Virus record (IMG/VR): IMGVR_UViG_3300042402_002641
Span: 216,020-280,019 of that record
Direction: 5' to 3' (one strand)
Length of the DNA: 64,000 nt
How positions within the stretch are numbered: position 1 is the first letter of the stretch; each line of letters starts with the position of its first letter. Positions 10,804 through 27,858 of the stretch are shown piece by piece. Below the pieces are notes generated by a model that was not told the origin of the DNA, searched no databases, and worked only from the letters and a program-made list of their open reading frames with translations. Both the position numbers and the translations under genes were made by a program.

Positions 10804-10805
10804 TC

Positions 10806-11162
10806 ATGTACTATGTATGTATAGAAAATAATCAGATCACAGGCATACAGAGTTATGAACCTGCGGTGCCTAACACAGTGTCTGTGGTTACTATCACAGA
10901 TACTCAACACGCACAGATCATGGCGCAGACACACCGATTCGATGTGGCTTCTAGAACTATAGTTGCTGTAGATCAAGCTATTATTAGTCAAAGAGAACAG
11001 GACAGGTTAAACGGTATAGAACGTGAATTTTTAAATTCAACTGATTGGAAAGTTATGCGCCATATTAGGCAAAAAGCTCTGGGAATTGCTACTAGCCTTA
11101 CTGATGCAGAGTACACAGAATTAGAGCAGCAGCGGCAGACCGCGGCAGCTCGCATAGTTTGA
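10806..11162 (+). CDS. Tail fibre assembly chaperone-like protein
   Basis: Small ORF directly after a fibre gene, with an 'R.FL..TDWKV.R....' motif typical of fibre assembly chaperones. Confidence 0.6.
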   Translation: MYYVCIENNQITGIQSYEPAVPNTVSVVTITDTQHAQIMAQTHRFDVASRTIVAVDQAIISQREQDRLNGIEREFLNSTDWKVMRHIRQKALGIATSLTDAEYTELEQQRQTAAARIV

Positions 11163-11194
11163 TAAGTAATAATAATGACTAGCGGAGTATATCA

Positions 11195-13003: not shown

Positions 13004-13004
13004 T

Positions 13005-13901: not shown

Positions 13902-13936
13902 TCGATTAAATATAAGACTTAATCAAAGACAAACGC

Positions 13937-14881
13937 ATGCCAGTAAATGACATTATCACCCAAGCAGAATACAACAATATCAGAAACAAAGTACTCGGAG
14001 TGCTCGGCACAGGATCGGGGAATTCTGGCTATGGACAACCCTTTGTCAGCACCGCGGTAGCAGAAGGAAATTCTATTACCATTAATGAGTATGCTAATCT
14101 AAGATACGATATTTTCAGTGCTTATGTACATCAGGTAGGATCTAATCCTTCTACAGTTACCGTAGTAGAAGGTAACACGGTAAGATTTAGTGCTATAGAT
14201 GCGCCAGTTACTACATACGATACACTAGCTAATACACTCATATCAAATAGATTTAATGTAGGAGCTGGACAATCAGCTATAAACATTCCCACCGCACCTT
14301 CAAGTACTACCTGGCCTGGAATATATGGTGCAGATTGGTCTAGCCTTATACAGTGTACAGTGACTGCTACATGGCCTGATAGTAATCAAGCTAGATATTT
14401 TTGGAACAGTGGTGGTCAGATTCGATTTACAGCATCTCGTACCGGCACTACTCCTACTACTCAGAACACACAATGGACGTCTATTCTCAGCACTGCTGGT
14501 ACACAGACCTATGGCGGTAATAATCCTGGCACTGGTACTAGTCCCAATGATGGCCAAAACTGGTACAGATGCACCAACACTCGACAGTTGTGGTACAGTC
14601 AAAGCGGATCTAGTCCTTACGGATCTAATACCTATAAAATATATGCTAGAACTTTAGATGCAAGCAATAACTCTACAGGCACCGCTCGCCAAGGTGAATG
14701 GCACATAGAGTTTGTTGATAACTATACAGATCCAGGTGGCCCTGCTCCAGGAGATTCAGTAGACGGAACATTCACAGTATCAGTTAGTTTACAATATGCT
14801 ACAGGTATTTTGGTACCGCCAAGTCAGGGTAGTTTTACAGTAACATTGCCTACAGTTACTATTTCAGCTATAACACCTTAA
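13937..14881 (+). CDS. Virion structural protein (paralog B)
   Basis: 'RYFWNSGGQIR' and 'PGDSVDGT' motifs. Preceded by TTAAATA at 13906-13912. Confidence 0.55.
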   Translation: MPVNDIITQAEYNNIRNKVLGVLGTGSGNSGYGQPFVSTAVAEGNSITINEYANLRYDIFSAYVHQVGSNPSTVTVVEGNTVRFSAIDAPVTTYDTLANTLISNRFNVGAGQSAINIPTAPSSTTWPGIYGADWSSLIQCTVTATWPDSNQARYFWNSGGQIRFTASRTGTTPTTQNTQWTSILSTAGTQTYGGNNPGTGTSPNDGQNWYRCTNTRQLWYSQSGSSPYGSNTYKIYARTLDASNNSTGTARQGEWHIEFVDNYTDPGGPAPGDSVDGTFTVSVSLQYATGILVPPSQGSFTVTLPTVTISAITP

Positions 14882-14938: not shown

Positions 14939-15289
14939 ATGAAGGATCAACTCAAAAAAGCTTTGGAGTTTGCTAATTACAGGCAGACGTTTTCAATTCA
15001 ACGTAAGATTCTAAAAGAAAAAATCGCAGCCAAGTTAACACTAGGTTATAATGGTGGACTATTTCAAATTGACAGAACGCTTCTGACTTTTATAGAAATG
15101 TTGCTAGTCAAAGGAAGAAGCAGCGGAGTTGTATTATTAGATACAAACGAAACCCCTATAATGATCGAGGATTTAGTTGCGTTTCGAGATGAATGCTTTG
15201 ATAGGTATTTCGAAGCCACTAGTGAGTATTTTGAACAAGACCAAAATCTCAAAAAAAGTAGATCAGTAGAAAAATTGCTAGAACAATGA
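14939..15289 (+). CDS. Hypothetical protein (possibly tail-assembly related)
   Basis: 116-aa ORF with AAGGA SD and an ATGA overlap with the next gene. Confidence 0.55.
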   Translation: MKDQLKKALEFANYRQTFSIQRKILKEKIAAKLTLGYNGGLFQIDRTLLTFIEMLLVKGRSSGVVLLDTNETPIMIEDLVAFRDECFDRYFEATSEYFEQDQNLKKSRSVEKLLEQ

Positions 15290-16146
15290 ACAAAGGTATA
15301 TTGATCTACGCTCATAATAATCGCACTGTGGACTATGCATTAATGGCGATTATTTCTGGAGGATTAGCTAAAAAATATCTTGGACAGCCTGCGTCGTTGG
15401 TTACTGACCAAGCCACGTTAGATTGGATGATAGAATCTAAGATATACACTCGTGCTCAAACAATTTTTGAAAATATTTTTATAGTTTCTAGACCCGAGTC
15501 AACTAATTCTAGAGGGTTGTATGATGGCACAGAACGCAGTACAGTTCAATTTATGAACGGTAACAGAAATTCCGCCTACGACATTACTCCATATCAACGA
15601 ACACTTTTGATTGACGCAGACTTTCTGATATTTTCCAATAGACTGGCAGAATATTGGGACATAGATGATGATTTTATGATTGGCGAATCTATTAATGATA
15701 TCTATGACAATCAACGACTAGGATATCATGATAACTATGTTTCGGACGTAGGTATTAAATTGTATTGGGCTACTACTGTGATGTTCACAAAAAATGATAA
15801 TTCAAAAATGTTTTTTGATCTTGTGCGCCATGTTAAGGATAACTATCAATACTATGCCGACACATACAGATTTGATTCAAAACAATACAGAAATGATATT
15901 GCATTTAGCGTGGCCAAACACGTATTAGCAGGATTTGAACAGTCACCATTGGGATGTTTACCGCCTGTGTTAACATCATTAGACAGAGATATACTACACT
16001 CTGTAGATGCCGATAAATTAACGTTTCTGATATCCCCGAAATTAGATGAGAATTATTGTGCGGCTTCGATACAGAATATTGACATTCATATAATGAATAA
16101 ACAGAGTATAGTAAGACATAGCGATAAATTACTGGAGCTGATATGA
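15286..16146 (+). CDS. GT-A fold glycosyltransferase-like protein (GT8-like)
   Basis: 'TPYQRTLLIDADFL' DxD motif, N-terminal beta-alpha Rossmann-like start, and 'RNDIAFS'. Confidence 0.65.
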   Translation: MNKGILIYAHNNRTVDYALMAIISGGLAKKYLGQPASLVTDQATLDWMIESKIYTRAQTIFENIFIVSRPESTNSRGLYDGTERSTVQFMNGNRNSAYDITPYQRTLLIDADFLIFSNRLAEYWDIDDDFMIGESINDIYDNQRLGYHDNYVSDVGIKLYWATTVMFTKNDNSKMFFDLVRHVKDNYQYYADTYRFDSKQYRNDIAFSVAKHVLAGFEQSPLGCLPPVLTSLDRDILHSVDADKLTFLISPKLDENYCAASIQNIDIHIMNKQSIVRHSDKLLELI

Positions 16147-16982
16147 AATTCGGATATCTGTTAATAGTAGCAGAGAATGAATTTGTGGACTATCTACAGT
16201 TAGCCTATGCCTTGGCTATCAGTATTAAAAATACACAAAAACCTGGGTTTGATCAAGTGGCACTAGTGATCAATGACAAGCAAAAACTTAAAGATTTAAA
16301 CAGCAGTTGGGTCTTTGATCATGTTATAGAATGGAATCAAGAAACATTCTGGGATGGTCGTAGCTGGATGGATCAGTTGACACCTTTTGACCACACAGTA
16401 TGCTTAGATGTTGACATGCTGTTTATGCGTGACTACAGTCATTGGGTCGAATACTTTATTGAAAACAGCGAATTATATGTTGCTAACAAAAGCTACACCT
16501 ATCGAGGAGAGATAGCTGTTGATCATCATTATCGAAAGACATTTATAAAAAACGATCTCCCTAATCTTTACAGCATGTATACCTTTTTTAAAAAAGATAG
16601 CGAAGCGGTTAAAGAATTTTTTGATCTAGGAAGATATATTATAAAAAATCCTATAGAATTTTCAAATATTTTTTTATCGGATCATAAACCTCGAGTTGTA
16701 GGTACAGATGAATCCTTTGCCTTGGCAGCTAAAATATTAGATATTACCGATGATATTGCATATCCTTTAGAGTTTCCCCGAGTTGTACATATGAAACCTA
16801 TGATACAGAATTGGCCATGGCCTGCTGATTGCTGGAGTGATCATGTAGGATTTTATCTAAATCAAAAAGGAAAACTAAAGATAGGAAATTATCAACAACA
16901 TGATATTGTTCATTATGTGGAAAAAGATAAAATTAACAAGGAAATGATCAATATTCTCGAGGAAGTTTTATGGAAGAAATAA
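16143..16982 (+). CDS. GT-A fold glycosyltransferase-like protein (GT8-like, paralog)
   Basis: 'TPFDHTVCLDVDML' DxD motif, 'TDESFALA', and a C-terminal 'VHY' His motif. Confidence 0.65.
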   Translation: MKFGYLLIVAENEFVDYLQLAYALAISIKNTQKPGFDQVALVINDKQKLKDLNSSWVFDHVIEWNQETFWDGRSWMDQLTPFDHTVCLDVDMLFMRDYSHWVEYFIENSELYVANKSYTYRGEIAVDHHYRKTFIKNDLPNLYSMYTFFKKDSEAVKEFFDLGRYIIKNPIEFSNIFLSDHKPRVVGTDESFALAAKILDITDDIAYPLEFPRVVHMKPMIQNWPWPADCWSDHVGFYLNQKGKLKIGNYQQHDIVHYVEKDKINKEMINILEEVLWKK

Positions 16983-17587
16983 TTGATTTTGATAATTGGC
17001 TTGCAAATTTCAAATTACCTCCTGTAAAATTTGTTGCGGTTTTTAATCCCGACACCGGCGCAGTAGTTAGTGTAGGACCTAGTCATGCCTTTAAAGATCA
17101 AAAACACAAAATATCTATAGATAAAGAATTGGCAGAATCTATAATTAATGCAGAAATTAAAATTAACAACTGCATAGTTGATATAAATTCAAATACTTTA
17201 GAAGTAGCAGAAATAAAAAATACCTATAAGATAGACGATGTGCTGCATAGAATTATTTCTAAGAAAGATTCTGAAATAAAAAACCCAGATATCTATATTA
17301 AATATGATTCAAAACTTAATACTTTTAAAATAGAAATGTCTTCAGAATTTGGGGGAACACGTAAGGCTAGGGCTGGGATAAAGAAAAGAAATATTGTATG
17401 GGATGGTGACACTGAAATGCAATTTTTTATTACAGAATACAACGACCCAAACTTGCTTTTTGAAACAGTAAGTGTTACAATTAACGATCTTACTGGAAAC
17501 CATAAATTGATTACAGGTTTTAACTATCCTAAATTTAGTGTGTACACTAGACGCTTGTTTAAAAACTATATGATAGAATATAAATGA
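16970..17587 (+). CDS. Hypothetical protein in glycosyltransferase cluster
   Basis: 205-aa ORF overlapping both neighbours. Confidence 0.6.
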   Translation: MEEIIDFDNWLANFKLPPVKFVAVFNPDTGAVVSVGPSHAFKDQKHKISIDKELAESIINAEIKINNCIVDINSNTLEVAEIKNTYKIDDVLHRIISKKDSEIKNPDIYIKYDSKLNTFKIEMSSEFGGTRKARAGIKKRNIVWDGDTEMQFFITEYNDPNLLFETVSVTINDLTGNHKLITGFNYPKFSVYTRRLFKNYMIEYK

Positions 17588-18501
17588 AAATTATTGAATT
17601 TGATGTTGTATTTTTAAGCTACGATGAACCTAATGCAGATCTACATTATGCAGATTTATGCAACAAAGTTCCTTGGGCTAAACGTGTACACGGTGTCAAG
17701 GGATCTGATCATGCTCATAAAGCCGCAGCAGAAGCTAGCGAAACAGATTGGTTTATCACTGTTGATGCTGACAACATTGTAGATCCTAAGTTTTTTAATA
17801 TTGACCTAGATATGAGTGATCCTAAGATTCAAGTCTACGGATGGTGCGGTCGAAATGTTATCAACGGCCTTCGATACGGCAATGGCGGTCTAAAAATTTG
17901 GAAAAAAGACTTTGTGCTTAATATGAAAACGCATGAAAACTCAGACAGCGATCGTGGACAGGTAGATTTCTGTTGGGAAGATGGATATCGAAATTTTCCT
18001 TTGAGTTTTAGCGATAGTGTTATTACTGGAAGTCCTTTTCAGGCCTGGAGAGCAGGGTTCCGTGAAGGTGTTAAAATGACCTTACTCGACGGAGTTAGGG
18101 TTCCAGCCCAAGAAATACAACAGAGAATATGGTGGCATAATATTCATAGGTTACGTATGTGGTCCACAGTTGGTAGCCATGAAGAAAACGGAATCTTTGC
18201 AGTTTATGGTGCAAGATTGGGAACCTGGATGGCTAATTGCACCAACTGGAATTATGTTGACGTTAGAGATTTTGAAATACTTAGAGGTATATGGAATCAA
18301 TACGGAAGACCATATGAAGAAGTTAATGGCGAAGGTCTCGTAGACGCAATAAAAGATCTTGGAGACAAAATAAAAATTAATTTAGGATTAGATTGGCCTT
18401 GGTTAGATGAAAGTCAAAGTAAGTATACTTTAGATCTCTACAATGAAACTATGAATTTAAACGATACATATTTTAAAATGCCGGTACCTGCCAATGTATG
18501 A
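17584..18501 (+). CDS. GT-A (GT2-like) glycosyltransferase
   Basis: 'DVVFLSYDEPNA', 'RVHGVKG...AH', 'TVDADN' (DxD), 'YGNGGLK' and 'AWRAGFRE'. Confidence 0.7.
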   Translation: MKIIEFDVVFLSYDEPNADLHYADLCNKVPWAKRVHGVKGSDHAHKAAAEASETDWFITVDADNIVDPKFFNIDLDMSDPKIQVYGWCGRNVINGLRYGNGGLKIWKKDFVLNMKTHENSDSDRGQVDFCWEDGYRNFPLSFSDSVITGSPFQAWRAGFREGVKMTLLDGVRVPAQEIQQRIWWHNIHRLRMWSTVGSHEENGIFAVYGARLGTWMANCTNWNYVDVRDFEILRGIWNQYGRPYEEVNGEGLVDAIKDLGDKIKINLGLDWPWLDESQSKYTLDLYNETMNLNDTYFKMPVPANV

Positions 18502-20161
18502 TATTTTTTATGTTTCTAAAACTGCAGGTAATGACAGTGACTGGGAATATATCAAGTCTAAATATCCCCTTGCGCATCGGTTAACCAACATAAGATCTTT
18601 TGACGACATTAAAATTAATTCTTTCACTAAGATGTTTTGGGTCATCTGGGATGATATACATCTAATAGACACATTTGATCTAACAGAATATAAAGCCACT
18701 AAGTGGGACGACATGTATGTTCACGTTTTTAAAAACGGAGAACATCACGATGGAGTATGTTTATTTCCTAAAGTATTGAACATCTCGCAACGAGAGTTTT
18801 ATCATAGATTTTTTACAGAAAAAAAAGAAATAGATATTTTAGCGAGCGTTCCTAAGAAATACAATGTATACTCACCTTCAAATTATGACGAGTATTTGTC
18901 TATTGATGATGAAATGTTTTGGTTAGTTTGGCCAGAAGTTGAAATTATAGACGAATCAGTTTTTAAATTGTATTTTAGTCATCATAATACCTACGATCGT
19001 AGAGAAAATCATATTTTTAAAAACACATGTAATAACGATGAATCGTATATGAGTGGAGTTATTCTCTGTAGTAAGTATAAACAAATTTCATCTCGAGAGT
19101 TTGAAAAACAATATGTGATCGATAAAAAAGAACATGATATAATTGCGAGTAGATTTCGATATCCGACGTATGTTATTCACAGCTATGAACAATATCTAGA
19201 AATTCTTAAAAATTTAAAAAATAAAATGTTTTGGGGTATATGGCCCGAAGTTGAAATAATTGACACAGAAATCTTTGATTTTTACTTCGATCCCAACAAT
19301 GGAACATACGACCATGATAGAAAAGAAAATCATACATTTAAACATCTGTTTAACAACACCGAAATTTATATTAACGGTGTAGTATTATTTTCTAAAGAAA
19401 AACAAATTAGTCAAAGAGAGTTTATTCATAGATTTTTGATTAATAAAAAAGAACACGATAGAATAGTATCAAAACATCGACTATATGATGTTGTGTTTAT
19501 ATCTTACAACGAATCTAATGCAGATGAAAATTACAATAAGTTACTTAATAAGTGTCCTAGAGCAAAAAGAATACACGGGGTTGAAGGTATACATCAAGCA
19601 CACATTGAAGCAGCATCTATTTGTAATACAGATATGATTTGGATAGTTGACGGAGATGCAATTATTGAAGATAGTTTTGATTTTGATATAGTTATGTCTA
19701 GTTATGATATTAATTGTGTACATGTGTGGCGTAGTCGTAATCCTATTAATGATTTAGAATATGGCAATGGCGGTGTTAAGTTATTGCCTAGAAAGTTAAC
19801 ATTAGATATGGACAAAACTACTCCGGATATGACAACAAGCATATCTAAAAAGTTTAAAGTCATGAATACTGTGTCAAATATTAATTCTTTTAATACTGAC
19901 GAATTTACTACGTGGAGATCGGCATTTAGAGAATGCTGCAAATTAGCCAGTAGAGTAATTAAACGGCAATATGAAGACGAAACACAACAGCGATTAGATA
20001 TTTGGTGCAGTGTAGGGAAAGATAAACAATACGGCGATTTTGCAATAATGGGTGCTAAAATGGGTAGACAATACGGATTAGATAATAAAAATAATCCTGA
20101 AGCGTTGCAAAAGATTAATGATTTTAAATGGCTAAGGAATATATTTAATAATGCTTACTGA
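18494..20161 (+). CDS. GT2-like glycosyltransferase with N-terminal repeated domains
   Basis: The C-terminal domain is paralogous to 17584 ('IVDGDA', 'YGNGGVK', 'WRSAFRE'). Three N-terminal repeats of 'MFW..W...H.FK...GV.L..K..IS.REF...KKE.D'. Confidence 0.7.
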   Translation: MYDIFYVSKTAGNDSDWEYIKSKYPLAHRLTNIRSFDDIKINSFTKMFWVIWDDIHLIDTFDLTEYKATKWDDMYVHVFKNGEHHDGVCLFPKVLNISQREFYHRFFTEKKEIDILASVPKKYNVYSPSNYDEYLSIDDEMFWLVWPEVEIIDESVFKLYFSHHNTYDRRENHIFKNTCNNDESYMSGVILCSKYKQISSREFEKQYVIDKKEHDIIASRFRYPTYVIHSYEQYLEILKNLKNKMFWGIWPEVEIIDTEIFDFYFDPNNGTYDHDRKENHTFKHLFNNTEIYINGVVLFSKEKQISQREFIHRFLINKKEHDRIVSKHRLYDVVFISYNESNADENYNKLLNKCPRAKRIHGVEGIHQAHIEAASICNTDMIWIVDGDAIIEDSFDFDIVMSSYDINCVHVWRSRNPINDLEYGNGGVKLLPRKLTLDMDKTTPDMTTSISKKFKVMNTVSNINSFNTDEFTTWRSAFRECCKLASRVIKRQYEDETQQRLDIWCSVGKDKQYGDFAIMGAKMGRQYGLDNKNNPEALQKINDFKWLRNIFNNAY

Positions 20162-21512
20162 AGAAAAAAAATACAAAAAAGTTATTGAAATTTTAGATTC
20201 TGTTAGTCCGAGTTTTTGTCTAGCAAAATGGCATCAATTAACATTGTATCTACAAAATGGATTTAATCATAGCTGTCACCATCCTAGTCCTCATCAGGTG
20301 CCGTTGGAGGAACTAGCTGTAAATCATAAAGCGTTGCATAACACACAATTTAAAAAAAAGCAGATGCAAAAAATGTTAGATGGCGAGCGTCCTAGTGAAT
20401 GTGATTATTGCTGGAAAGCAGAAGATGCAGGCAGAATAAGTGATCGTGTTTATAAGAGTGCATCGTCATGGGCAAAAATTAATTTTGATTCTGTAATAGA
20501 AAATAAAACAGCAGATGTTAATCCCGCTTATCTAGAAATTAGTTTTAGCAATGTTTGCAATTTTAAATGTGCTTATTGTAGTCCAGATTTAAGCAGCCAA
20601 TGGTTTGAAGAAATTAAAACTCACGGCCCGTATCCAACATCATACAAATACAATAATTTTGATTGGTTTGAAAAAACAGGAAAAATGCCTATTAAACATA
20701 GTGACTATAATCCTTATGTTGAAGCTTTTTGGAAATGGTGGCCTGAGTTATATAGAGATCTACATACCTTAAGATTGACCGGAGGTGAACCATTATTAAG
20801 CAAAGATGCTTGGAAAATGATAGATTATATTGAGGACAATCCTAATAAAAATTTAGTGTTTGCTATCAATACTAACTTATGTGTACCTGATGAGTTAGTT
20901 GATAAAATAATATCGAAGATACAAAATATTTCTATAGATACTAAAGAATTTCAGTTTTTTACCAGTGGTGAAGCACTAGGAGCTCCTGCTGAATATATCA
21001 GATATGGTCTTGATTACAACAAATGGTCTGCTAATCTAGAAAAAGTTTTAGATAACACAAATGTTATTGTTGCAATTATGACTACAGTTAACTTAACCAG
21101 TGTAACTACCTATGCCGACTTTTTGAGATACATTTTAGATCTCAGAGGAAAATATAATAAAAACGCCGATTTTAATAAAGTTCAGTTCATGACAAACTTT
21201 TTAAGATACCCTGAATTTTTATCTTTGACACTACTAGATCGAGAAACTAAAGCAACATTTACTCAAGATATCGAAACTCTAATAGCAGAGAGAGGTGTCT
21301 GGGACGGCTTTGCTACATTAACTTTTTCTGAAGTCGATCAACTACGGCGCATGCTAGATTATATGAATTCTTCAATAGATGATGACAAATTAACATTATT
21401 AAGAACGGATTTTAAATCGTTTGTTGACGAATATGACCGTAGACGAAATACTAATTTTAATCAAGTATTTCCTGAATTAACTAACTTTTACAACCTATGC
21501 AACAAGACATAA
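20151..21512 (+). CDS. Radical SAM protein with N-terminal twitch/SPASM-like Cys cluster
   Basis: CNFKCAYC (CxxxCxxC) and GGEP motifs. N-terminal C...C...CxxC. Confidence 0.85.
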   Translation: MLTEEKKYKKVIEILDSVSPSFCLAKWHQLTLYLQNGFNHSCHHPSPHQVPLEELAVNHKALHNTQFKKKQMQKMLDGERPSECDYCWKAEDAGRISDRVYKSASSWAKINFDSVIENKTADVNPAYLEISFSNVCNFKCAYCSPDLSSQWFEEIKTHGPYPTSYKYNNFDWFEKTGKMPIKHSDYNPYVEAFWKWWPELYRDLHTLRLTGGEPLLSKDAWKMIDYIEDNPNKNLVFAINTNLCVPDELVDKIISKIQNISIDTKEFQFFTSGEALGAPAEYIRYGLDYNKWSANLEKVLDNTNVIVAIMTTVNLTSVTTYADFLRYILDLRGKYNKNADFNKVQFMTNFLRYPEFLSLTLLDRETKATFTQDIETLIAERGVWDGFATLTFSEVDQLRRMLDYMNSSIDDDKLTLLRTDFKSFVDEYDRRRNTNFNQVFPELTNFYNLCNKT

Positions 21513-22825
21513 GAAAAACAATAGAGCTCATCAACGATATCAGTCCTAGTTTTTGTGCGGCCAAATGGTATAATGCCACTATCTGGTTAGGGAATGGTCG
21601 CACCGCCAGTTGCCATTTGCCTCCGGCGCACAGTATTCCCTTAGAAGAAATTAAAAATAATCCAAGTGCTTTACATAATACGACATTTAAAAAACATCGA
21701 AGACTAGAAATGATTCAAGGCAAAAGATGCAAAGAATGTGCATACTGCTGGACTGTAGAAGATAATGCTTCTCCTGATGTATACAGTGATCGTGTCTATA
21801 AGACCAGGATTTATCAAGAAAACGAAATATTGCAATTAGCCAGACTTGATCCTCAAGCAGATATTGATCCTAAAACATTAGAAATTAGTTTTGATAATTT
21901 ATGTAATTTAAGTTGCAGTTATTGTAATTCAGAATTCAGCACAACCTGGGCCAGCGATATTAAACTTAATGGCCCGTATACTGAATTAAAGACTCAGGGC
22001 GGTGGTGCATTTCAAAATTCAGGTGAACATGCATTGCCCTATGGCATTAAGAATGAAAATAATCCCTATATAGAAGCTTTTTTTAAATGGTTTCATGCTA
22101 GCCTTAAAAACAATTTACAAGAGCTTAGAATTACCGGAGGGGAACCTACACGAAGTCCTTGGTTTTGGAAATTATTAGACGAATGCAAAGATACAAAATT
22201 TGATTTTGCAGTTAACAGTAATCTTATAATGGACCAAAATAAACTTGCACAACTCATTGATGCTAGTAAAAAATTTAAAAAGTTTGATTTATACACCAGC
22301 GGAGAGGGCTATGGCGCTCACGGTGAGTTTATTAGATGGGGATTAGATTATAGTTTATGGAGAAAAAATTTAATTCAGTTTGCTCAAGAAGGCAAATACA
22401 GTATGATCCATGTAATGATGACTATTAGTGCTTTGAGCATTTGGTCAATAACTGAATTCATGACAGATATGCTAGAATTAAGAAAACAATTTGGTGGTCA
22501 TCAATTCCACATGAGTCTTAATTTAGTGAGATTTCCTAGCTTTCAAAATTTGAATGTGTTGCCGATAGATCTAAAACAAATCCAGGTAAATAAAATCGAA
22601 ACGTGGCTCAGTGATGCTGTTGGGTTAAGTTCATCCGAACAAAATCAAATAGAAAGAATCGTTGAGTATCTTAAAAATGTTGATCGCAGTCAAGAAGACA
22701 CAGATAGCCAAGAAAATAAACAGCATGATTTAAAAAAATTTACACAACAATATGCTGATAGAAAAAATGTTGATCTCTCAACAGTATTTCCAAAAGAATT
22801 CACACAATGGTTTAACACAATATGA
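21497..22825 (+). CDS. Radical SAM protein (twitch-like N-terminus)
   Basis: CNLSCSYC and GGEP motifs. Close paralog of the preceding gene. Confidence 0.85.
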   Translation: MQQDIRKTIELINDISPSFCAAKWYNATIWLGNGRTASCHLPPAHSIPLEEIKNNPSALHNTTFKKHRRLEMIQGKRCKECAYCWTVEDNASPDVYSDRVYKTRIYQENEILQLARLDPQADIDPKTLEISFDNLCNLSCSYCNSEFSTTWASDIKLNGPYTELKTQGGGAFQNSGEHALPYGIKNENNPYIEAFFKWFHASLKNNLQELRITGGEPTRSPWFWKLLDECKDTKFDFAVNSNLIMDQNKLAQLIDASKKFKKFDLYTSGEGYGAHGEFIRWGLDYSLWRKNLIQFAQEGKYSMIHVMMTISALSIWSITEFMTDMLELRKQFGGHQFHMSLNLVRFPSFQNLNVLPIDLKQIQVNKIETWLSDAVGLSSSEQNQIERIVEYLKNVDRSQEDTDSQENKQHDLKKFTQQYADRKNVDLSTVFPKEFTQWFNTI

Positions 22826-24036
22826 ACGAAGATAAATTCTGTATAATACCTTGGATACACCTTAACACAGAACCCAATGGGCGTGTTAAACCGTGTTGTG
22901 CATATTTTGGAGAAGAGTCGGGAAATTTAAAAAATACTACACTAGAAGAAATATGGAATAACGAACATACTAAATCTATGCGTAGAAGCTTTTTAGAAAA
23001 TAAAATCCCAGAAGGATGTCTAACCTGTACTAAAAAAGAAAGCAGTGGCGGAGTAAGCTACCGGATGGCAGTCACTGAAAGATTCAGTCATCATATCGAA
23101 AAAGCTAAAAGTAATACATTGCCCGATGGTACCTATGAAACATTTGAAATAATTTTTTGGGATTTTAGATTTAGTAATATCTGTAACTTTAAATGCCGTA
23201 TGTGTGGCCCCGGCGCAAGCAGTTCTTGGTACGACGATTTTAGTCCGGAAGAAAAGAAAACTAACATAAAATTCTTAGACAGTTCTTACTATGGAACTGA
23301 TTTAATGAAATATGTTGACCAGTTTATCGATAGTGTTGAAGAAATTTATTTTGCAGGCGGTGAACCGTTGCTTATGGCTGAACATTATCAAATATTAGAT
23401 AAGTTAATTTCTAAAGAACGCTATGATGTATTTTTAAGATACAACACCAACATGAGTACTATTAAGTATAAAGACTATGACTTAATCAACATATGGAAAA
23501 GATTTAAGAGCGTGAAAATATTTGCCAGTATTGACGGTATAGAAGAAAACGCAGAATACAGCAGATCAGGCACGGACTGGCCAAAGGTAGAAGAAAATTT
23601 AAAAAAACTGGTAAACTCTAAAGTTGACTACGTTGTATCTAGTACTATAAACATCTTTAATGTTTTTAATTTTACACACTTAGTAGACAGACTAATAGAA
23701 TTAAAAATGTCAACTAGAAAGATGTTAGTAAGTCATGTTAACTGGCCTCATTACTACATGACTTCAATTCTGCCGGAAGATATAAAGGATAAAATAAGAT
23801 TACAGTTAGACGAACACCTAGAAAAAATAACCCCAACAATTACAGAAGAAGAAAGTAGGTGGCTTGGTAACTTATACAACGAGATTAAATTTTATCTAAT
23901 ACCTACAACTTCACCAGAAGAAACTGTTAAATTGCGGAAAAAATTTAAGTATGATACTGTTAAATTAGATAGTATCAGAAAAGAAGATATTAGAATCGCT
24001 GCGCCCGAATTAGCTGAATGGTTTGATACATTATGA
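22822..24036 (+). CDS. Radical SAM protein (twitch/SPASM-like N-terminus)
   Basis: CNFKCRMC and GGEP motifs. N-terminal 'C..PW......G.V.PCC...GNL...TLEEIWN...C..C'. Confidence 0.85.
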   Translation: MNEDKFCIIPWIHLNTEPNGRVKPCCAYFGEESGNLKNTTLEEIWNNEHTKSMRRSFLENKIPEGCLTCTKKESSGGVSYRMAVTERFSHHIEKAKSNTLPDGTYETFEIIFWDFRFSNICNFKCRMCGPGASSSWYDDFSPEEKKTNIKFLDSSYYGTDLMKYVDQFIDSVEEIYFAGGEPLLMAEHYQILDKLISKERYDVFLRYNTNMSTIKYKDYDLINIWKRFKSVKIFASIDGIEENAEYSRSGTDWPKVEENLKKLVNSKVDYVVSSTINIFNVFNFTHLVDRLIELKMSTRKMLVSHVNWPHYYMTSILPEDIKDKIRLQLDEHLEKITPTITEEESRWLGNLYNEIKFYLIPTTSPEETVKLRKKFKYDTVKLDSIRKEDIRIAAPELAEWFDTL

Positions 24037-25241
24037 ACGATAAATTTATTTGCGACTTTCCCTGGGTGCATCTAAGTGTGTTTCCACAAGGTAATTGTAC
24101 AATTTGTTGTGTAGCCAAACATTCCGGAAAAGGTAACGGGCATTCATGGAATCGTATTAGCGAAGATAAAACTAAAACTGTTACAGTAATGAATAGCACA
24201 GTTTCAGAAATCATTAACTGTGATAATTACAGGGCAATTAGATTAGATATGCTTGCTGGAAAAGTTCCGACAGCATGCGAAGGATGTCACCAGGTAGAGC
24301 AAGCAGGCGGCAGAAGTAAGCGACAATTAGAAACTAATCGAAATTTAGATCATGCGGCATTAACTGCCGATGATGGAGCTATCAAATCAGACTTACGACA
24401 CATAGAACTACGCCTAGGCAACTTTTGTAATCTGAAATGTCGAAGCTGCAATGCAGATTCTAGCACAAGTTGGATTCAAGACTATTATAAACTTAAAGAT
24501 ACAGTAAAGTTAGCCAGCGGTTATCATTGGATTAAAAGCAATCCCGAATTTAGCTTTGACTGGGTCGATGATGAATCGTTTTACGACCAGTTAACAGAGC
24601 TAGCACCTAATCTTGAACAAATACATATCAGTGGCGGCGAACCATTTTTAGTGCCTACGCATTTTAAATTGTTAGAAAAACTTGTTCGCGAAGGCAAGAC
24701 TGATATTGCTATACACTATCATACCAATTTGAATTACAAGTGGGAGAAAATTACTCCGGCATTAGACCTGCTTACACAATTCAAAGAAGTACATATTAAT
24801 TTTAGTATCGACGATGTAGAAGAACGAAATACTTATATTAGAAGTTTAAGTGATTGGAATTTAACTATAAGTAATTTAAAATTATTTCTAACACACTACA
24901 ATTTCATTTTTGCTGTTACTCAAACTGTAAGTGTATATAACTTTATGTATGTAGAAGAATTAACACAATATCTTAAAGAAAACAATATTTACATTAAAGT
25001 GCGTTTGAATCATGTGCAGAGTCCGGATTACTTAGATGCTAATGTATTGCCTAAGCAAGTACGCCAAGATAAGATTAATTCGTTACAAGGAATTGTCATT
25101 CCCCGTATATGGGAAGATTTATACGGTCATTATTACAATCCGGAAGCTAACGGCCAGTGGGATTATTTTAAATACTTTACTGAAAAAATCGACGCAGTAC
25201 GTAACGAAAACTTAAATGATATTTTTCCAAAACTTGCATGA
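24033..25241 (+). CDS. Radical SAM protein (twitch-like N-terminus)
   Basis: CNLKCRSC and GGEP motifs. N-terminal 'CDFPW...CC...CEGC'. Confidence 0.85.
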   Translation: MNDKFICDFPWVHLSVFPQGNCTICCVAKHSGKGNGHSWNRISEDKTKTVTVMNSTVSEIINCDNYRAIRLDMLAGKVPTACEGCHQVEQAGGRSKRQLETNRNLDHAALTADDGAIKSDLRHIELRLGNFCNLKCRSCNADSSTSWIQDYYKLKDTVKLASGYHWIKSNPEFSFDWVDDESFYDQLTELAPNLEQIHISGGEPFLVPTHFKLLEKLVREGKTDIAIHYHTNLNYKWEKITPALDLLTQFKEVHINFSIDDVEERNTYIRSLSDWNLTISNLKLFLTHYNFIFAVTQTVSVYNFMYVEELTQYLKENNIYIKVRLNHVQSPDYLDANVLPKQVRQDKINSLQGIVIPRIWEDLYGHYYNPEANGQWDYFKYFTEKIDAVRNENLNDIFPKLA

Positions 25242-26038
25242 AATTTATTTTTTTAAAAACTGGTGATTATTTAGACCTAGAGCCTAATAATACTCCTATT
25301 GCGTCTGCGTGGTTTGATTATATTTTTTCTAAGCAGATGAATATGAGTTATTTTGCTAGAGATGCATTGTTTGTAACTCGAACTAATGACACTATTAAAG
25401 ATCTAAATTCCGCAATCGATATTGTACATCAATTTGCTATAGAAAAGAACTTGCCCCAACTTATTTTTAATAAAATTATTGACCTTGACCAATCATGGCT
25501 TAATGCTTCTCATAAAAAGTGGGTAAAATACACACACGAATTAAAAAACATTGTTAACGGCGACGATACAAAACAACACTATCCTGCCGTTGTAAAATCT
25601 TGGCAAAACATTAATCTGTTTATCCATTCGTTAGAAAACTATTACTCGGCTTATTTTACTAATACTAAAGGCGCATATCTAGAAGACGTCAAAGTCAATA
25701 TAAGACCAGAAGATTGCGAGTACGCACAACATGACTTAATTCTAAGATTTGACGATTTAGGTAAACACCAATACGATCAATGGTTGACAGGCAGTAGTGT
25801 TGACTGGGAAACTAGTAACTACAAGACAATATCGGCGAGATTTGAATACGCATATAATCCGCAAACAATTAAAGGATTACAGCCAAATCAAGATTATATT
25901 AACTGGTGTTCTAAAAACAACTTACAAGCAATGCCGCCGTTTATTATTTTAGGAAATTTTAAAAAGAATAGATGGGACGTTAAACAACTTATGCATCAAA
26001 ATCTATCGAAAGGATTAGAAGTAGGATTTGAGTTATGA
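25238..26038 (+). CDS. Hypothetical protein
   Basis: 266-aa ORF with ATGA overlaps at both ends. Confidence 0.6.
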   Translation: MKFIFLKTGDYLDLEPNNTPIASAWFDYIFSKQMNMSYFARDALFVTRTNDTIKDLNSAIDIVHQFAIEKNLPQLIFNKIIDLDQSWLNASHKKWVKYTHELKNIVNGDDTKQHYPAVVKSWQNINLFIHSLENYYSAYFTNTKGAYLEDVKVNIRPEDCEYAQHDLILRFDDLGKHQYDQWLTGSSVDWETSNYKTISARFEYAYNPQTIKGLQPNQDYINWCSKNNLQAMPPFIILGNFKKNRWDVKQLMHQNLSKGLEVGFEL

Positions 26039-26880
26039 AGATATATGTAAACGGTGATAGTTTCACCGACGGTGACGGTCTAGCTGATGCAGAAACATTC
26101 CCGGGCATGTACCCGGGACATCATCATGCAGATGGAAATCTAATTGTAGATCGCCGGTGGTCAAATGCTCGGCACGATATACTGTCAAATGACTTGTCAT
26201 TATGGGACACATATCGTAATAATAATCGGAAATATGTTTGGGCAACAATATTAGGAGAGCTTGTTGGTGCTAGTGTGGTTAATAATGCCGTTGGTGGTTC
26301 TTGTATGATGGGAATTGCAACTAGGACTATTGCAGATCTTAGCTCAATACACCTACGTGCAAATTTGCCAGACTACGTCTTTATAGGATTAACAATGTCT
26401 GATCGTCTAGGATGGTACGATAAAGAACATACAGAAAACAATCATACAGGAAGTTGGGTTAAAACAGCTATACCCGCATTCAGCGAAAGAATGTTACCCG
26501 AACACTATAAAAAGATGTTCATGGCTACATGGGCAACACTGTCTGACGAAGAATTGCTTATAAATTATCTAAAAGAATGTTTACAAATTAAAAATTATGT
26601 TAAGCGAAGAATTGGCCGAGATCCTATTTTTTTAAATACCTCATACCAATTTTGGGAGTATAAAAATATAGTTCAATCATCTAAAAATCAATGGCTTAGA
26701 ATGCTTTGGTTCGAGTTATTAGAATTTGATAAGATTAACCCCCAATGGTTTAATTCTGGATCGTTTGACATTGTAACAGCTTGTGGACATGCTATTCCGG
26801 AAGTTCATTCTCAATTTGCAAGAGATATAGCTAGAGAACACTTTGGTTGGGGCAAAAGTCCGGTTGACAAAGATGCCTAG
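26035..26880 (+). CDS. SGNH/GDSL-family protein (acyl hydrolase or acyltransferase)
   Basis: Block I 'YVNGDSFT', block II 'NNAVGGS', and C-terminal catalytic His 'CGHA'. Confidence 0.7.
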   Translation: MKIYVNGDSFTDGDGLADAETFPGMYPGHHHADGNLIVDRRWSNARHDILSNDLSLWDTYRNNNRKYVWATILGELVGASVVNNAVGGSCMMGIATRTIADLSSIHLRANLPDYVFIGLTMSDRLGWYDKEHTENNHTGSWVKTAIPAFSERMLPEHYKKMFMATWATLSDEELLINYLKECLQIKNYVKRRIGRDPIFLNTSYQFWEYKNIVQSSKNQWLRMLWFELLEFDKINPQWFNSGSFDIVTACGHAIPEVHSQFARDIAREHFGWGKSPVDKDA

Positions 26881-27778
26881 AATTTTTCTTCCAACAGTTA
26901 ACGAATATCGAGAAATAAATCGCATTGTAGCATTTGGGTGTAGCCAAACCGCAGGCTCAGAACTTCTTGATTCAAAAAGATATCCAAACATTCCTGATGT
27001 AGAATTAAAAAAACACAGCCTAGGAATAGAAGGATGGCACAAATATTCAGAGAATGAATCAAATCTGCCGTTACATTTTAAAATACAAGACGAAGAACGT
27101 ATGTTAGCGTGGCCTGCACAACTAGCAAAACTTTATAACATTCCTATTCATAACTATGCCGAGCCAGCAACTGGCAATGAGCAACAGATGGCACAATTCT
27201 TAAAAGCAAAATCTGAAGGTGTTATTAGTAACGACACACTAGTGCTCTGGGGATTTACTAGTATGAATCGAGGCTTTTGGATTGACCAAGAACAAGGATG
27301 TTCATATTATCTGCTCGGTAATAACAAGATCTTTAAACAACCCGTTGACATAAACATGTTTAATGAAAAACTGTGGTATAACGGTATAAATTCAGATTAT
27401 ATGTTAGCATGGAGATATTATCAAAGTTTATCTACTATCTTCCATTGGGCTAACGAAATATGTAACGAACAGTTTTTATTCATTCAGGCATTACATTATT
27501 CACCAAGTTACGAACAATGGTCTGCTAAAATAGAAGGTCCAGTAAATCCAACGGTCGAGCTGTTAATGCAAAGATTTTGGGATACTATAAAATACAATTA
27601 CGAAATAAAATACCCAATTTTTAAAGATTTTGAGCAGACAAATCTGTTCACTTGGAGTAAAAGTATTGGCGGTCGACTAGGGTGCGGGCATCCAACATTA
27701 GATGCACATGAAAAATATGCACTTTTAATTAAAAATGAGCTTGACCGGTTAGAACAAGAGTCCAGTTGACAAAGACGC
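26853..27778 (+). repeat. 24-bp direct repeat pair (21/24 identical) flanking the second SGNH gene
   Basis: CAAAAGTCCGGTTGACAAAGATGC (26853-26876) versus CAAGAGTCCAGTTGACAAAGACGC (27755-27778). Confidence 0.75.
26873..27769 (+). CDS. SGNH/GDSL-family protein (paralog)
   Basis: 'VAFGCSQTAG', 'NYAEPATGN' and 'CGHP'. The ATG at 26873 is preferred as the start. Confidence 0.65.
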   Translation: MPRIFLPTVNEYREINRIVAFGCSQTAGSELLDSKRYPNIPDVELKKHSLGIEGWHKYSENESNLPLHFKIQDEERMLAWPAQLAKLYNIPIHNYAEPATGNEQQMAQFLKAKSEGVISNDTLVLWGFTSMNRGFWIDQEQGCSYYLLGNNKIFKQPVDINMFNEKLWYNGINSDYMLAWRYYQSLSTIFHWANEICNEQFLFIQALHYSPSYEQWSAKIEGPVNPTVELLMQRFWDTIKYNYEIKYPIFKDFEQTNLFTWSKSIGGRLGCGHPTLDAHEKYALLIKNELDRLEQESS

Positions 27779-27858
27779 AGAATGATTACAAATGCGTATC
27801 ATTTTCCGTTGGATGAAGTCAATTACTTACATGAGACTGAATTTTAATTGCAAATACG

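What the first reader, a model, noticed from the sequence alone, without database searches (positions are those of the whole stretch)
20151..25241. Expanded family of radical SAM proteins with the auxiliary Cys cluster placed N-terminally
Seen: four tandem copies, plus a fifth at 46819-47922 on the other strand. All have a Cys-rich N-terminal segment (C...C(C)...CxxC), then CxxxCxxC, GGEP, and a shared tail 'D..R...(F/A)P(E/K)(L/F)'. Known: in characterised SPASM/twitch enzymes the auxiliary domain is C-terminal. Inference: a permuted, phage-expanded subfamily with diversified substrates, representing uncharacterised radical chemistry. No obvious RiPP precursor is adjacent.
Basis: partly seen in the sequence, partly recalled or inferred. 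Interest (0 to 1): 0.65.

Follow-up and report, generated by a model that had tools for sequence, protein, structure and literature searches.

The report
Phage radical SAM cassette, N-terminal twitch
A large lake-water phage carries five radical SAM enzymes whose extra iron-sulfur domain sits at the front of the protein instead of the back; they belong to an already catalogued but never characterised family, and four of them form a conserved cassette behind sugar-transferase-like genes next to the tail-fibre genes, so they most likely tailor a phage-made glycan.

Summary
Five intact ORFs (20151-21512, 21497-22825, 22822-24036, 24033-25241 on +; 46819-47922 on -) share four invariant N-terminal Cys, CxxxCxxC, GGEP and the C-terminal D..R...[FA]P[EK] tail.

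The architecture is not new to databases. All five score above the curated cut-off of NCBIfam NF033640, "N_Twi_rSAM, twitch domain-containing radical SAM protein". I found no biochemical paper on it.

The N-terminal domain alone matches one solved structure, the C-terminal twitch domain of BtrN, with all four cluster cysteines aligned.

"Phage-expanded" is only partly right:
- The family is very large and also occurs in bacterial MAG contigs.
- The four tandem copies are old, distinct ortholog groups (21-37% identical) under purifying selection.
- Related phages keep them in a variable slot holding one to six copies.

Across 80 related viral contigs, 43 show the same gene order: two GT8-like genes, a spacer, a GT-A-fold gene, then the radical SAM array. 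The annotated neighbours are mostly carbohydrate enzymes.

Best reading: tailoring enzymes of a phage-encoded glycan module in the tail-fibre (host-recognition) region. The substrate is inferred, not shown. Interest is moderate.

The parts
20151..21512 (+). P1, N-terminal-twitch radical SAM protein (453 aa). This is the 'core' copy, present directly after the 555-type gene in every relative examined.
   Evidence: NF033640 at 347.8 bits against a cut-off of 170. It is 91-92% identical to its L011 ortholog with dN/dS 0.046. P1-type copies occur in L176, L177 and L178.
21497..22825 (+). P2, N-terminal-twitch radical SAM protein (442 aa).
   Evidence: NF033640 at 282.6 bits. It has its own ortholog group with L011_8668, L006_8658 and L013_8658.
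22822..24036 (+). P3, N-terminal-twitch radical SAM protein (404 aa). It is the best match to the family model and the copy that was folded.
   Evidence: NF033640 at 380 bits. Pfam SPASM at residues 7-70 and Radical_SAM at 117-284. AF2 model with pLDDT 94.4. Nearest solved folds are SkfB, BlsE, anSME and CteB at Z 12.6-12.8.
22840..23031 (+). Twitch-like auxiliary-cluster domain of P3 (residues 7-70; Cys 7, 26, 66, 69).
   Evidence: Pfam SPASM model 1-67/67, E 3e-11. The domain-only profile A6 hits only the BtrN twitch region 168-238, E 3.5e-4, with all four Cys aligned.
23182..23205 (+). CxxxCxxC radical SAM cluster motif of P3 (Cys 121, 125, 128).
   Evidence: Invariant in the 60-sequence alignment A2.
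23356..23367 (+). GGEP SAM-binding motif of P3 (residues 179-182).
   Evidence: Invariant in A1 and A2.
23968..24021 (+). Conserved C-terminal tail of P3 (D383, R386, E388, P395, W400).
   Evidence: Nearly invariant columns of A2. It is helical in the model. Its role is unknown.
24033..25241 (+). P4, N-terminal-twitch radical SAM protein (402 aa).
   Evidence: NF033640 at 334.6 bits, with SPASM at residues 7-86. Its ortholog group includes L011_12016, L006_12520 and L013_11232.
46819..47922 (-). P5, a divergent stand-alone N-terminal-twitch radical SAM protein (367 aa) among replication genes.
   Evidence: NF033640 at 183.3 bits, just over the cut-off. It sits on a long branch in the tree. Its subfamily is single-copy in two other phage-like contigs.
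46484..46774 (-). A 96-aa hydrophobic (likely membrane) protein directly downstream of P5; a possible partner.
   Evidence: The same gene follows the P5 ortholog in L094 and is 73% identical, while the enzymes are 49% identical. It has no Pfam family.
15286..16982 (+). Two paralogous GT8-like glycosyltransferase candidates (286 and 279 aa).
   Evidence: Protein-atlas look-alikes are nucleotide-diphospho-sugar transferase, Glyco_transf_8 and Mannosyl_trans3 clusters; this is a lead only. DxD-like motifs are seen in the sequence. The family is present in 49 of 80 viral loci that carry the array.
17584..20161 (+). Two paralogous GT-A-fold proteins: 305 aa, and 555 aa whose C-terminal half is homologous to the 305-aa protein.
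   Evidence: AF2 model with pLDDT 84. Residues 1-150 match GT-A glycosyltransferases (B4GALNT1 Z 10.7, STIV A197 10.2, PBCV-1 A64R 9.4) and also nucleotidyltransferases. D61-x-D63 is invariant. The family is present in 61 of 80 viral loci.
25238..27769 (+). Variable accessory genes after the array: 266 aa (unknown), 281 aa (GDS motif, faint GDSL match), 308 aa (unknown).
   Evidence: The L011 homolog of the 281-aa protein corresponds in size and position to the DUF6473 gene of L176. Content differs between relatives.
8533..14881 (+). Tail-fibre-like genes (756 and 602 aa) and two Ser/Thr-rich paralogs (298 and 314 aa), upstream on the same strand.
   Evidence: Repetitive fibre-like sequences. 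A Collar/gp10_C protein lies at 4537-6648. Homologs sit upstream of the same module in L011, L065 and L040.

Best explanation
The five genes encode functional radical SAM enzymes of the catalogued but uncharacterised family NF033640.

How each enzyme is expected to work:
- Each should bind two [4Fe-4S] clusters. One sits on CxxxCxxC and cleaves SAM to the 5'-deoxyadenosyl radical.
- The second is fully Cys-ligated and sits on an N-terminal twitch domain homologous to the C-terminal twitch domain of BtrN. It would act as the electron relay for the substrate radical.

What the four tandem copies are:
- They are four distinct, anciently diverged enzymes.
- They sit in a variable slot at the end of the late, tail-fibre ('host recognition') gene block.
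- The order is fixed: two GT8-like genes, a spacer, one or two GT-A-fold genes, then the radical SAM array.

Proposed function: they most likely act as tailoring enzymes on sugars. Possible reactions are oxidation to keto-sugars, epimerisation, deoxygenation or C-C chemistry. The substrate could be a nucleotide-sugar or a glycan already attached. This would diversify a phage-made glycan that decorates the virion fibres or the host envelope.

Shown versus inferred:
- Shown: family membership, motifs, the homology and position of the twitch domain, purifying selection, and synteny.
- Inferred: cluster binding, the chemistry, a sugar substrate, and the acceptor.

The fifth copy, among early or replication genes and paired with a small hydrophobic protein, probably has a separate role.
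For: Family and architecture:
- All five score over the NF033640 cut-off.
- Pfam SPASM lies N-terminal to Radical_SAM.
- The C-terminal SPASM regions of the NirJ2, AhbD and PqqE models align to residues 5-84.
- The domain-only profile hits only the BtrN twitch region, with four Cys aligned.
- Exactly seven Cys are invariant, three plus four.

Functionality:
- dN/dS is 0.05-0.16 against orthologs.
- The sequence is identical in independent lake metagenomes.
- The phage encodes two A-type Fe-S carrier proteins.

Distinct enzymes rather than recent copies:
- Pairwise identity is 21-37%.
- Each copy sits in its own starred clade with orthologs from L011, L006, L009 and L013.

Glycan link:
- The stereotyped order '8 8. 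A R...' occurs in 43 of 80 viral loci, and in 41 of the 64 with enough upstream sequence.
- The 305-aa protein has a GT-A fold and an invariant DxD.
- Annotated neighbours in viral loci are carbamoyltransferases (6), GT7 with a lectin domain (6), NDP-sugar epimerase/dehydratases (3), dTDP-sugar isomerase and APS kinase.
- L006 has seven copies flanked by three GT7 genes, a cytidylyltransferase and a 6-deoxyhexose-type enzyme set.
- Bacterial neighbours include GT2, GT1, GDSL, carbamoyltransferase and transketolase.

Variable slot: one to six copies lie between constant flanks in close relatives, and the GC content dips to 0.32-0.36.

Literature: pelagimyophage host-recognition clusters carry GT8 genes and radical SAM cassettes (PMC7029224).
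Against: - No member of the family has a known substrate, so the sugar assignment rests on gene neighbourhood only.
- Most neighbours have no Pfam match at all.
- The GT-A fold match cannot be told apart from sugar-nucleotidyltransferases, which score about equally. The GT8 call is a language-model lead.
- Bacterial members are fused to TPR or Sel1 repeats, and Asp/Asn beta-hydroxylase or PhyH genes sit nearby. Both fit protein substrates as well.
- The 80 viral loci were chosen as the best matches to one query, so the synteny counts are biased towards relatives of this phage.
- I could not read model coordinates, so the clustering of the four Cys and their distance to the SAM cluster were not measured.
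Confidence: 0.5

Rival explanations
1. The enzymes modify proteins or peptides. Candidates are phage structural proteins such as the neighbouring fibre proteins or the Ser/Thr-rich 298/314-aa proteins. Possible reactions are Calpha/Cbeta oxidation as in anSME, epimerisation, or thioether or C-C cross-links. The glycosyltransferase-like genes would then act on the same protein independently.
For: - The nearest solved folds are mostly peptide or protein modifiers: SkfB, anSME, CteB, SuiB.
- Bacterial members are fused to TPR or Sel1 protein-binding repeats.
- Asp/Asn beta-hydroxylase and PhyH dioxygenases are neighbours.
- The cassette is co-directional with the tail-fibre genes.
Against: - No RRE/PqqD domain and no precursor gene are present.
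- Only one auxiliary cluster is predicted, whereas most peptide-modifying SPASM enzymes carry two.
- The only solved relative of the N-terminal domain is BtrN, which acts on a carbohydrate-like aminocyclitol.
- The annotated neighbours are dominated by carbohydrate enzymes.
Confidence: 0.22
2. The enzymes act on nucleotides, DNA or a diffusible small molecule. Examples would be a modified nucleotide, a DNA hypermodification or an aminoglycoside-like product used in phage-host conflict. The transferase-like genes would build or attach that molecule.
For: - Weak similarities to viperin, MoaA and BlsE, all of which act on nucleotides or nucleosides.
- The GT-A-like protein matches nucleotidyltransferases about as well as glycosyltransferases.
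- Carbamoyltransferases and BtrN-type enzymes are, from my own knowledge, typical of aminoglycoside pathways.
- The phage has GTP cyclohydrolase I and a further weak radical SAM gene, which hints at 7-deazaguanine chemistry elsewhere in the window.
Against: - Scores for viperin (about 25 bits against a cut-off of 180) and MoaA (43 against 284) are far below their cut-offs.
- The cassette sits in the late structural block beside fibre genes, not with the nucleotide-metabolism genes on the other strand.
- Lectin-domain GT7 proteins in relatives point to glycan acceptors.
Confidence: 0.15
3. One reading: a recent, phage-specific expansion of one permuted enzyme whose copies are drifting towards new substrates.
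For: - Several copies lie in tandem, and copy number differs between relatives.
- P3 is much less conserved than P1 between relatives: 53% against 92%.
Against: - The paralogs are 21-37% identical.
- Each has orthologs in several other phage contigs.
- Members from bacterial MAG contigs interleave in the tree.
- The family is found in bacterial genome collections at 29-37% identity.
- Variation in the slot looks like gain and loss of pre-existing types, not local duplication.
Confidence: 0.05

Closest known systems
NCBIfam NF033640, N_Twi_rSAM (twitch domain-containing radical SAM protein)
   Same: All five proteins match the model end to end and above its curated cut-off. They have the same N-terminal four-Cys domain, CxxxCxxC, GGEP and C-terminal helical tail.
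   Different: Nothing differs structurally. The family has a descriptive name only, and I found no paper on its function. P5 is a marginal member at 183 bits against the cut-off of 170.
BtrN (2-deoxy-scyllo-inosamine dehydrogenase of butirosin biosynthesis), the founding twitch-domain enzyme
   Same: The N-terminal domain profile aligns to BtrN residues 168-238 with all four auxiliary-cluster Cys matched and nearly the same spacing. Both have a single auxiliary cluster. BtrN's substrate is a carbohydrate-like aminocyclitol.
   Different: In BtrN the domain follows the barrel; here it precedes it, and a roughly 85-residue helical bundle closes the C-terminus instead. The whole-protein match is weak (E 0.007). 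There is no evidence for the same reaction.
SPASM-domain maturases (anSME, SkfB, CteB, SuiB, PqqE)
   Same: They are the best structural neighbours of the barrel, at Z 11.9-12.8. The Pfam SPASM model matches the N-terminal domain.
   Different: Those enzymes carry the domain C-terminally. Most bind two auxiliary clusters through seven or eight Cys, and many use an RRE and a precursor peptide. Here there are four Cys, no RRE and no precursor.
Radical SAM cassettes in the 'host recognition cluster' of pelagimyophages and other marine T4-like phages (PMC7029224; PMC5332604)
   Same: They have the same genomic setting: a variable region with tail fibres, GT8-type glycosyltransferases and radical SAM gene cassettes that come and go between close relatives. 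Fe-S assembly genes occur in the same genomes.
   Different: Those papers only mention the genes. They do not describe the domain order, the ortholog structure or the fixed gene order. This phage is from lake water and is larger (280 kb or more).

Membership tests
Radical SAM superfamily | CxxxCxxC cluster motif at the start of a partial (beta/alpha)6 barrel, plus a GGE-type SAM-binding motif | tested here: met
   C136/C140/C143 and GGEP are invariant in all five copies. PF04055 hits all five; three are over the cut-off and two fall below it as stand-alone hits. The model's nearest folds are all radical SAM barrels.
NF033640 N_Twi_rSAM | Whole-protein score at or above the curated cut-off of 170 bits, with a full-length model match | tested here: met
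   Scores are 347.8, 282.6, 380.0, 334.6 and 183.3 bits. The model is covered from positions 1-2 to 394-398 of 398.
NF033640 N_Twi_rSAM | Twitch-type auxiliary domain placed N-terminal to the radical SAM core | tested here: met
   Pfam SPASM lies at residues 7-70 and 7-86, ahead of Radical_SAM at about 117-284. The domain-only profile hits the BtrN twitch domain.
Twitch domain (one auxiliary [4Fe-4S]) | Three or four conserved Cys that bind one extra cluster (definition as in PMC9477430) | tested here: met
   Four invariant Cys are found in 60 sequences. All four align to the BtrN Cys positions. Actual metal binding was not tested.
Twitch domain (one auxiliary [4Fe-4S]) | The domain actually binds a [4Fe-4S] cluster close to the SAM cluster | not testable with these tools
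   This needs reconstitution, iron/sulfide analysis and EPR or Moessbauer spectroscopy. Model coordinates could not be read to measure Cys-Cys distances.
SPASM domain (two auxiliary clusters) | A seven- or eight-Cys motif C-terminal to the barrel | tested here: not met
   Only four extra invariant Cys are present, all N-terminal. No conserved Cys lies after the barrel.
RiPP radical SAM maturases | An RRE/PqqD-like recognition domain and an adjacent precursor-peptide gene | tested here: not met
   No PqqD/RRE family appears in the Pfam scans. Genes overlap or abut from 15286 to 27769, leaving no space for a small ORF. All named maturase models score far below their cut-offs.
Prokaryotic viperins, MoaA and NrdG-type activases | Score over the equivalog cut-off of the NCBIfam model | tested here: not met
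   viperin_w_prok scores 21-26 bits against 180. MoaA scores at most 43 against 284. NrdG2 scores at most 29.5 against 131.
GT-A glycosyltransferases (for the neighbouring 305-aa protein) | A Rossmann-like nucleotide-sugar-binding fold with a DxD metal-binding motif | tested here: inconclusive
   The fold matches GT-A enzymes at Z 9-10.7 over residues 1-150, but MobA and IspD nucleotidyltransferases score about 10 as well. D61-x-D63 is invariant. No Pfam family matches.

The most novel reading that the evidence does not exclude
The module of GT8-like genes, GT-A-fold genes and a radical SAM array is a virus-side glycan diversification system. A conserved transferase core plus a swappable set of one to seven N-terminal-twitch radical SAM enzymes would build strain-specific rare sugars on the tail fibres or virion surface of abundant aquatic T4-like phages. 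That would tune host recognition or shield the fibres, in analogy to O-antigen serotype variation in bacteria. Each ortholog group would carry out a different, so far undescribed radical reaction on a sugar.
Probability: 0.25. Interest if true: 0.75.

Novelty: new member of a known kind. Interest (0 to 1): 0.5.

Why it matters
The family is large: the word search returned more than 5000 protein clusters. At least 593 viral contigs encode relatives, and this cassette recurs in lake metagenomes from 19 studies. No member has an assigned reaction.

Three results make it approachable:
- The copies are distinct ortholog groups.
- They sit in a fixed order behind glycosyltransferase-like genes.
- They vary as a cassette beside the fibre genes.

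Together these give enzymologists defined targets: one core type (P1) and several accessory types. They also give phage biologists a testable idea about virion or host-surface glycan diversification. The enzymes would also be a natural case of a twitch domain moved to the other end of the barrel, which is useful for asking how auxiliary clusters are positioned.

Tried and rejected
- DNA search of the cassette against 50,697 phage records found no match. By protein, only distant relatives appear in Vibrio KVP40-like phages, Vibrio phage K566 and Ralstonia phage RsoM2USA.
- Literature searches for 'N-terminal twitch', 'N-terminal SPASM' and 'N-terminal auxiliary' returned nothing. The exact NCBI product name gave six papers, none on this family. 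A search for radical SAM sugar or capsule epimerases gave no characterised member.
- Pfam and PHROGs scans of ten neighbouring genes gave essentially no hits.
- BLASTP of the 555-aa protein against a GT7 protein of L006 showed no similarity.
- The haem N-demethylase-like gene next to P5 is not conserved beside P5 relatives, so I dropped it as a partner.
- Promoter and terminator scans were no better than shuffled sequence, so they give no operon evidence beyond the gene overlaps.
- A recent local duplication was rejected by the tree. Pseudogenes or decay were rejected by intact frames, invariant motifs and low dN/dS.
- No RNA run holds the stretch, so expression and timing are untested.

Full report
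**The thing itself**

The window is the last 64 kb of a 280-kb linear IMG/VR virus record, estimated 79% complete. It is a T4-like jumbo phage. Its DNA polymerase (43745-46408, minus strand) is 50% identical to that of Sinorhizobium phage Phosso and 46% to Agrobacterium phage Atu_ph07.

At 20151-25241 lie four overlapping ORFs on the plus strand, of 453, 442, 404 and 402 aa. I call them P1 to P4. A fifth ORF of 367 aa, P5, lies at 46819-47922 on the minus strand. The five proteins are only 21-37% identical to each other. They share these invariant columns, in P1 numbering:
- four N-terminal Cys: C23, C42, C84, C87
- CxxxCxxC: C136, C140, C143
- GGEP at 211-214
- a Pro inside the tail D..R...[FA]P[EK]

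**What the proteins are**

All five exceed the curated cut-off (170 bits) of NCBIfam NF033640, 'N_Twi_rSAM, twitch domain-containing radical SAM protein'. The scores are 348, 283, 380, 335 and 183 bits, and the matches run end to end.

Pfam puts a complete SPASM model at residues 7-70 of P3 and 7-86 of P4, in front of the Radical_SAM domain. The C-terminal SPASM parts of the NirJ2, AhbD and PqqE models also align to residues 5-84 of P3.

A profile of the N-terminal 100 residues alone (A6, 45 sequences) has one significant hit among all PDB sequences. That hit is the C-terminal twitch region of BtrN, residues 168-238, at E 3.5e-4, and all four Cys are aligned.

Only seven Cys are invariant across 60 family members: three for the SAM cluster and four for one auxiliary cluster. 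This fits a twitch domain and not a seven-Cys SPASM domain.

An AlphaFold model of P3 is confident (pLDDT 94.4). It shows the N-terminal domain, the barrel and a helical C-terminal bundle of about 85 residues. The nearest solved folds are SkfB, BlsE, anSME, CteB, SuiB and MoaA at Z 11.7-12.8, with TM-scores of only 0.34-0.45. The enzyme therefore belongs to the SPASM/twitch clade but has no close solved relative.

The literature defines SPASM and twitch domains as C-terminal. It notes that some members of that megacluster have extra Cys N-terminal to the barrel, with no structures available (PMC9477430). I found no paper on the N-terminal-twitch family itself. The architecture is thus real and permuted, already catalogued, and biochemically uncharacterised.

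**Are the genes functional and real?**

- dN/dS against the orthologs in contig L011 is 0.046 for P1 and about 0.16 for P2 and P3, with dS saturated.
- The same sequence, with no differences in the laid contig pieces, is present in lake-water metagenomes. Holders come from 19 studies; no RNA run holds it.
- The phage also encodes two A-type Fe-S carrier proteins elsewhere in the genome. This matches an earlier remark that marine T4-like genomes rich in radical SAM genes carry Fe-S assembly genes (PMC5332604).

**Is it a phage expansion?**

Only in part.
- The word search returned more than 5000 protein clusters at E of 1e-5 or better.
- A scan of 185,579 species genomes found 307 stretches that encode relatives at 29-37% identity. 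They come from contigs assigned to Bdellovibrionota, Bacteroidota, Elusimicrobiota, Verrucomicrobiota and Synechococcus, nearly all of them MAGs, and often hold two to five copies within 20 kb.
- In a maximum-likelihood tree of 135 members, each tandem copy sits in its own well-supported group with orthologs from other phage contigs, and sequences from bacterial MAG contigs interleave. The groups are P1 with L011_7322, L006_7297 and L013_7303; P2 with L011_8668, L006_8658 and L013_8658; P3 with L011_9980, L006_10001, L009_10001 and L013_10001; and P4 with L011_12016, L006_12520 and L013_11232.
- The copies are therefore old and distinct, not recent duplicates.
- In 80 related IMG/VR loci, copy numbers per 21 kb or less are 1 (9 loci), 2 (13), 3 (12), 4 (4), 5 (19), 6 (21) and 7 (2). 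An array of four is ordinary for this group.

**The surroundings**

Upstream on the same strand lie, in order:
- baseplate or fibre genes, including a Collar/gp10_C protein at 4537-6648
- two fibre-like proteins of 756 and 602 aa
- two Ser/Thr-rich paralogs of 298 and 314 aa
- a 116-aa protein
- two paralogs of 286 and 279 aa
- a 205-aa protein
- two paralogs of 305 and 555 aa

None of these has a Pfam or PHROG family. The 286-aa protein resembles nucleotide-diphospho-sugar transferase and GT8 clusters by language-model features, which is a lead only.

The 305-aa protein was folded (pLDDT 84). Its first 150 residues match GT-A glycosyltransferases: B4GALNT1 at Z 10.7, STIV A197 at 10.2 and the PBCV-1 capsid glycosyltransferase A64R at 9.4. 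Nucleotidyltransferases score about equally. An invariant D-x-D is present. This protein is strikingly abundant and conserved: about 8000 clusters, and the best 120 are all at least 82% identical.

After the array come proteins of 266, 281 (GDS motif, faint GDSL match) and 308 aa. Then the strand switches. GC content falls to 0.32-0.36 between 16 and 28 kb, against 0.40-0.45 elsewhere.

**Synteny across phages**

I built HMMs of the 305-aa family and of the 286/279-aa family and searched the 80 viral loci.
- 61 loci carry the 305-aa family and 49 carry the GT8-like family.
- 43 loci show the full same-strand order: two GT8-like genes, zero to two spacer genes, the 305-aa family once or twice, then the radical SAM array. 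That is 41 of the 64 loci with enough upstream sequence.
- In 55 loci the 305-aa family lies within four genes upstream of the first radical SAM gene.

The loci were picked as the best matches to a P3-type query, so these fractions describe relatives of this phage group and not all viruses.

Among the bacterial-collection loci, only L038, L040 and L065 have these partner genes. They also carry the fibre-like genes, so they are probably phage contigs binned into MAGs.

**The slot is variable**

The flanks are constant: the 555-type gene on one side and the 101-aa minus-strand gene on the other. Between them, close relatives hold:

| Contig | Content of the slot |
|---|---|
| L176, L177 | one P1-type enzyme plus a DUF6473 gene |
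| window | four enzymes plus three accessory genes |
| L011 | four enzymes plus two accessory genes |
| the P0044 contig | four enzymes with a 262-aa gene inserted |
| L178 (356-kb contig) | five enzymes in the order P1, P2, P4, P3 and one further type, plus a sixth gene that matches the family profile only weakly (35 bits) |

P1 is always present and is the most conserved copy: 90-92% identical in L011 and L178. P3 is about 53-54% identical.

This matches the description of pelagimyophage 'host recognition clusters'. There, tail fibres sit with GT8 glycosyltransferases, and close relatives differ by radical SAM cassettes (PMC7029224).

**What the neighbours say about the substrate**

Most neighbours are unannotated. 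Those with a family are mainly carbohydrate enzymes.
- In 148 neighbours from viral loci: carbamoyltransferase 6, GT7 with a lectin-like domain 6, NDP-sugar epimerase/dehydratase 3, APS kinase 2, dTDP-sugar isomerase 1, methyltransferase 1, SufE 2 and Asp/Asn hydroxylase 1.
- L006 has seven copies between three GT7 genes, a cytidylyltransferase, three NDP-sugar epimerase/dehydratases, an RmlC-type isomerase and a thiamine-enzyme fragment.
- L009 has GT7 genes and a carbamoyltransferase.
- In 148 neighbours from bacterial-collection loci: PhyH 7, GT2 5, GT1 3, GDSL 3, carbamoyltransferase 2, transketolase 2 and TPR 4.

Against a pure sugar reading, some bacterial members are fused to TPR or Sel1 repeats, and hydroxylases of the protein-modifying type occur nearby.

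**Most likely mechanism**

Each enzyme binds SAM at the CxxxCxxC cluster and generates the 5'-deoxyadenosyl radical. That radical abstracts a hydrogen from the substrate. The fully Cys-ligated twitch cluster then passes an electron to or from the substrate radical, the role proposed for BtrN (from my own knowledge of that enzyme).

Four different enzymes lie in a row behind four transferase-like genes, in a variable, low-GC slot next to the fibre genes. This is best explained as tailoring of a phage-made glycan. The reactions could be oxidation, epimerisation, deoxygenation or carbon-chain chemistry on nucleotide-sugars or on attached sugars.

The position in the late, fibre-encoding strand block slightly favours the virion itself as the acceptor, for example the Ser/Thr-rich proteins. 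That step is inference only.

I put this whole reading at about 0.5, protein modification at about 0.2, and nucleotide, DNA or small-molecule chemistry at about 0.15.

**The fifth copy**

P5 is a long-branch member. It lies between the DNA polymerase gene and a haem N-demethylase-like gene. Its subfamily is single-copy in two other phage-like contigs.

Its neighbour downstream, a 96-aa hydrophobic protein, is kept next to the ortholog in L094. That protein is more conserved than the enzyme, 73% against 49%. P5 probably works in a different process; I have no good hypothesis for it.

**Verdict**

What this analysis adds is the ortholog structure, the fixed gene order with GT-A-like genes across dozens of viral contigs, and the cassette-like variation beside the fibre genes. 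I rate it as new members of a known, unstudied kind, of moderate interest.

Noticed in passing
window 17584-18501: The 305-aa GT-A-fold protein is extraordinarily abundant and conserved in metagenomes. The word search returned about 8000 clusters, and the best 120 are all 82-89% identical. It is far more conserved than the radical SAM genes next to it.
   Followed up: partly
window 16000-28000: GC content drops to 0.32-0.36 across the transferase and radical SAM cassette, against 0.40-0.45 in the rest of the window. This looks like a compositional island, as in O-antigen gene clusters.
   Followed up: no
window 46484-46774 (-) and L094:7104-7394: A 96-aa hydrophobic protein directly follows the fifth radical SAM gene here and in a distant contig. 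It is 73% identical while the enzymes are 49% identical. It has no Pfam family.
   Followed up: partly
window 47937-49014 (-): A haem-dependent oxidative N-demethylase alpha-subunit-like protein (PF11927, E 8e-22) sits next to an S-adenosylmethionine decarboxylase (PF02675, E 8e-20). Both lie beside a SAM-consuming radical enzyme.
   Followed up: no
G000:C1:32912-33923 (outside the window): Two adjacent A-type Fe-S cluster carrier genes (PF01521, 58 and 63 bits) lie in the same phage genome. This fits a phage that has to load many Fe-S enzymes.
   Followed up: partly
window 32183-33037 (-), 36247-36996 (-), 34224-34835 (-): A sixth, weak radical SAM protein (PF04055 at 25.7 bits, below the cut-off) lies near GTP cyclohydrolase I and a phosphoribosyltransferase. 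This may be a 7-deazaguanine-type pathway. It was not examined.
   Followed up: no
window 56563-59781 (-); L095:1-3416: The phage encodes a ClpB-like chaperone (784 aa) and a DnaJ (286 aa). The same DnaJ and ClpB pair, with a peptide deformylase, lies near the P5-type gene in a 350-kb contig.
   Followed up: no
L016, L017, L027, L050 (bacterial MAG loci): Bacterial family members are fused to Sel1 or TPR repeats, either N- or C-terminally. This hints that at least some members recognise protein partners or substrates.
   Followed up: partly
L065:6906-9113: A 735-aa protein fuses an N-terminal-twitch radical SAM enzyme to a second Radical_SAM domain at residues 440-603.
   Followed up: no
L038, L040 (Haliscomenobacter MAG), L065 (Rickettsiales MAG): These 'bacterial' contigs carry the same module of fibre-like genes, GT8-like genes, the 305-aa family and the radical SAM array as the phage. 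They are probably phage contigs binned into MAGs.
   Followed up: partly
window 20151-25241: The cassette is found near-identical in lake-water metagenomes and one crustacean-associated metagenome, from 19 studies dated 2016-2025. The phage is a widespread freshwater lineage. Its host is unknown.
   Followed up: partly
window 8533-10803 and 11195-13003: Two fibre-like proteins share a nearly identical N-terminal ~130 residues ('MAY.V.KF.GA...EDGTIDT...') and then diverge. This looks like alternative fibres on a common attachment domain.
   Followed up: no
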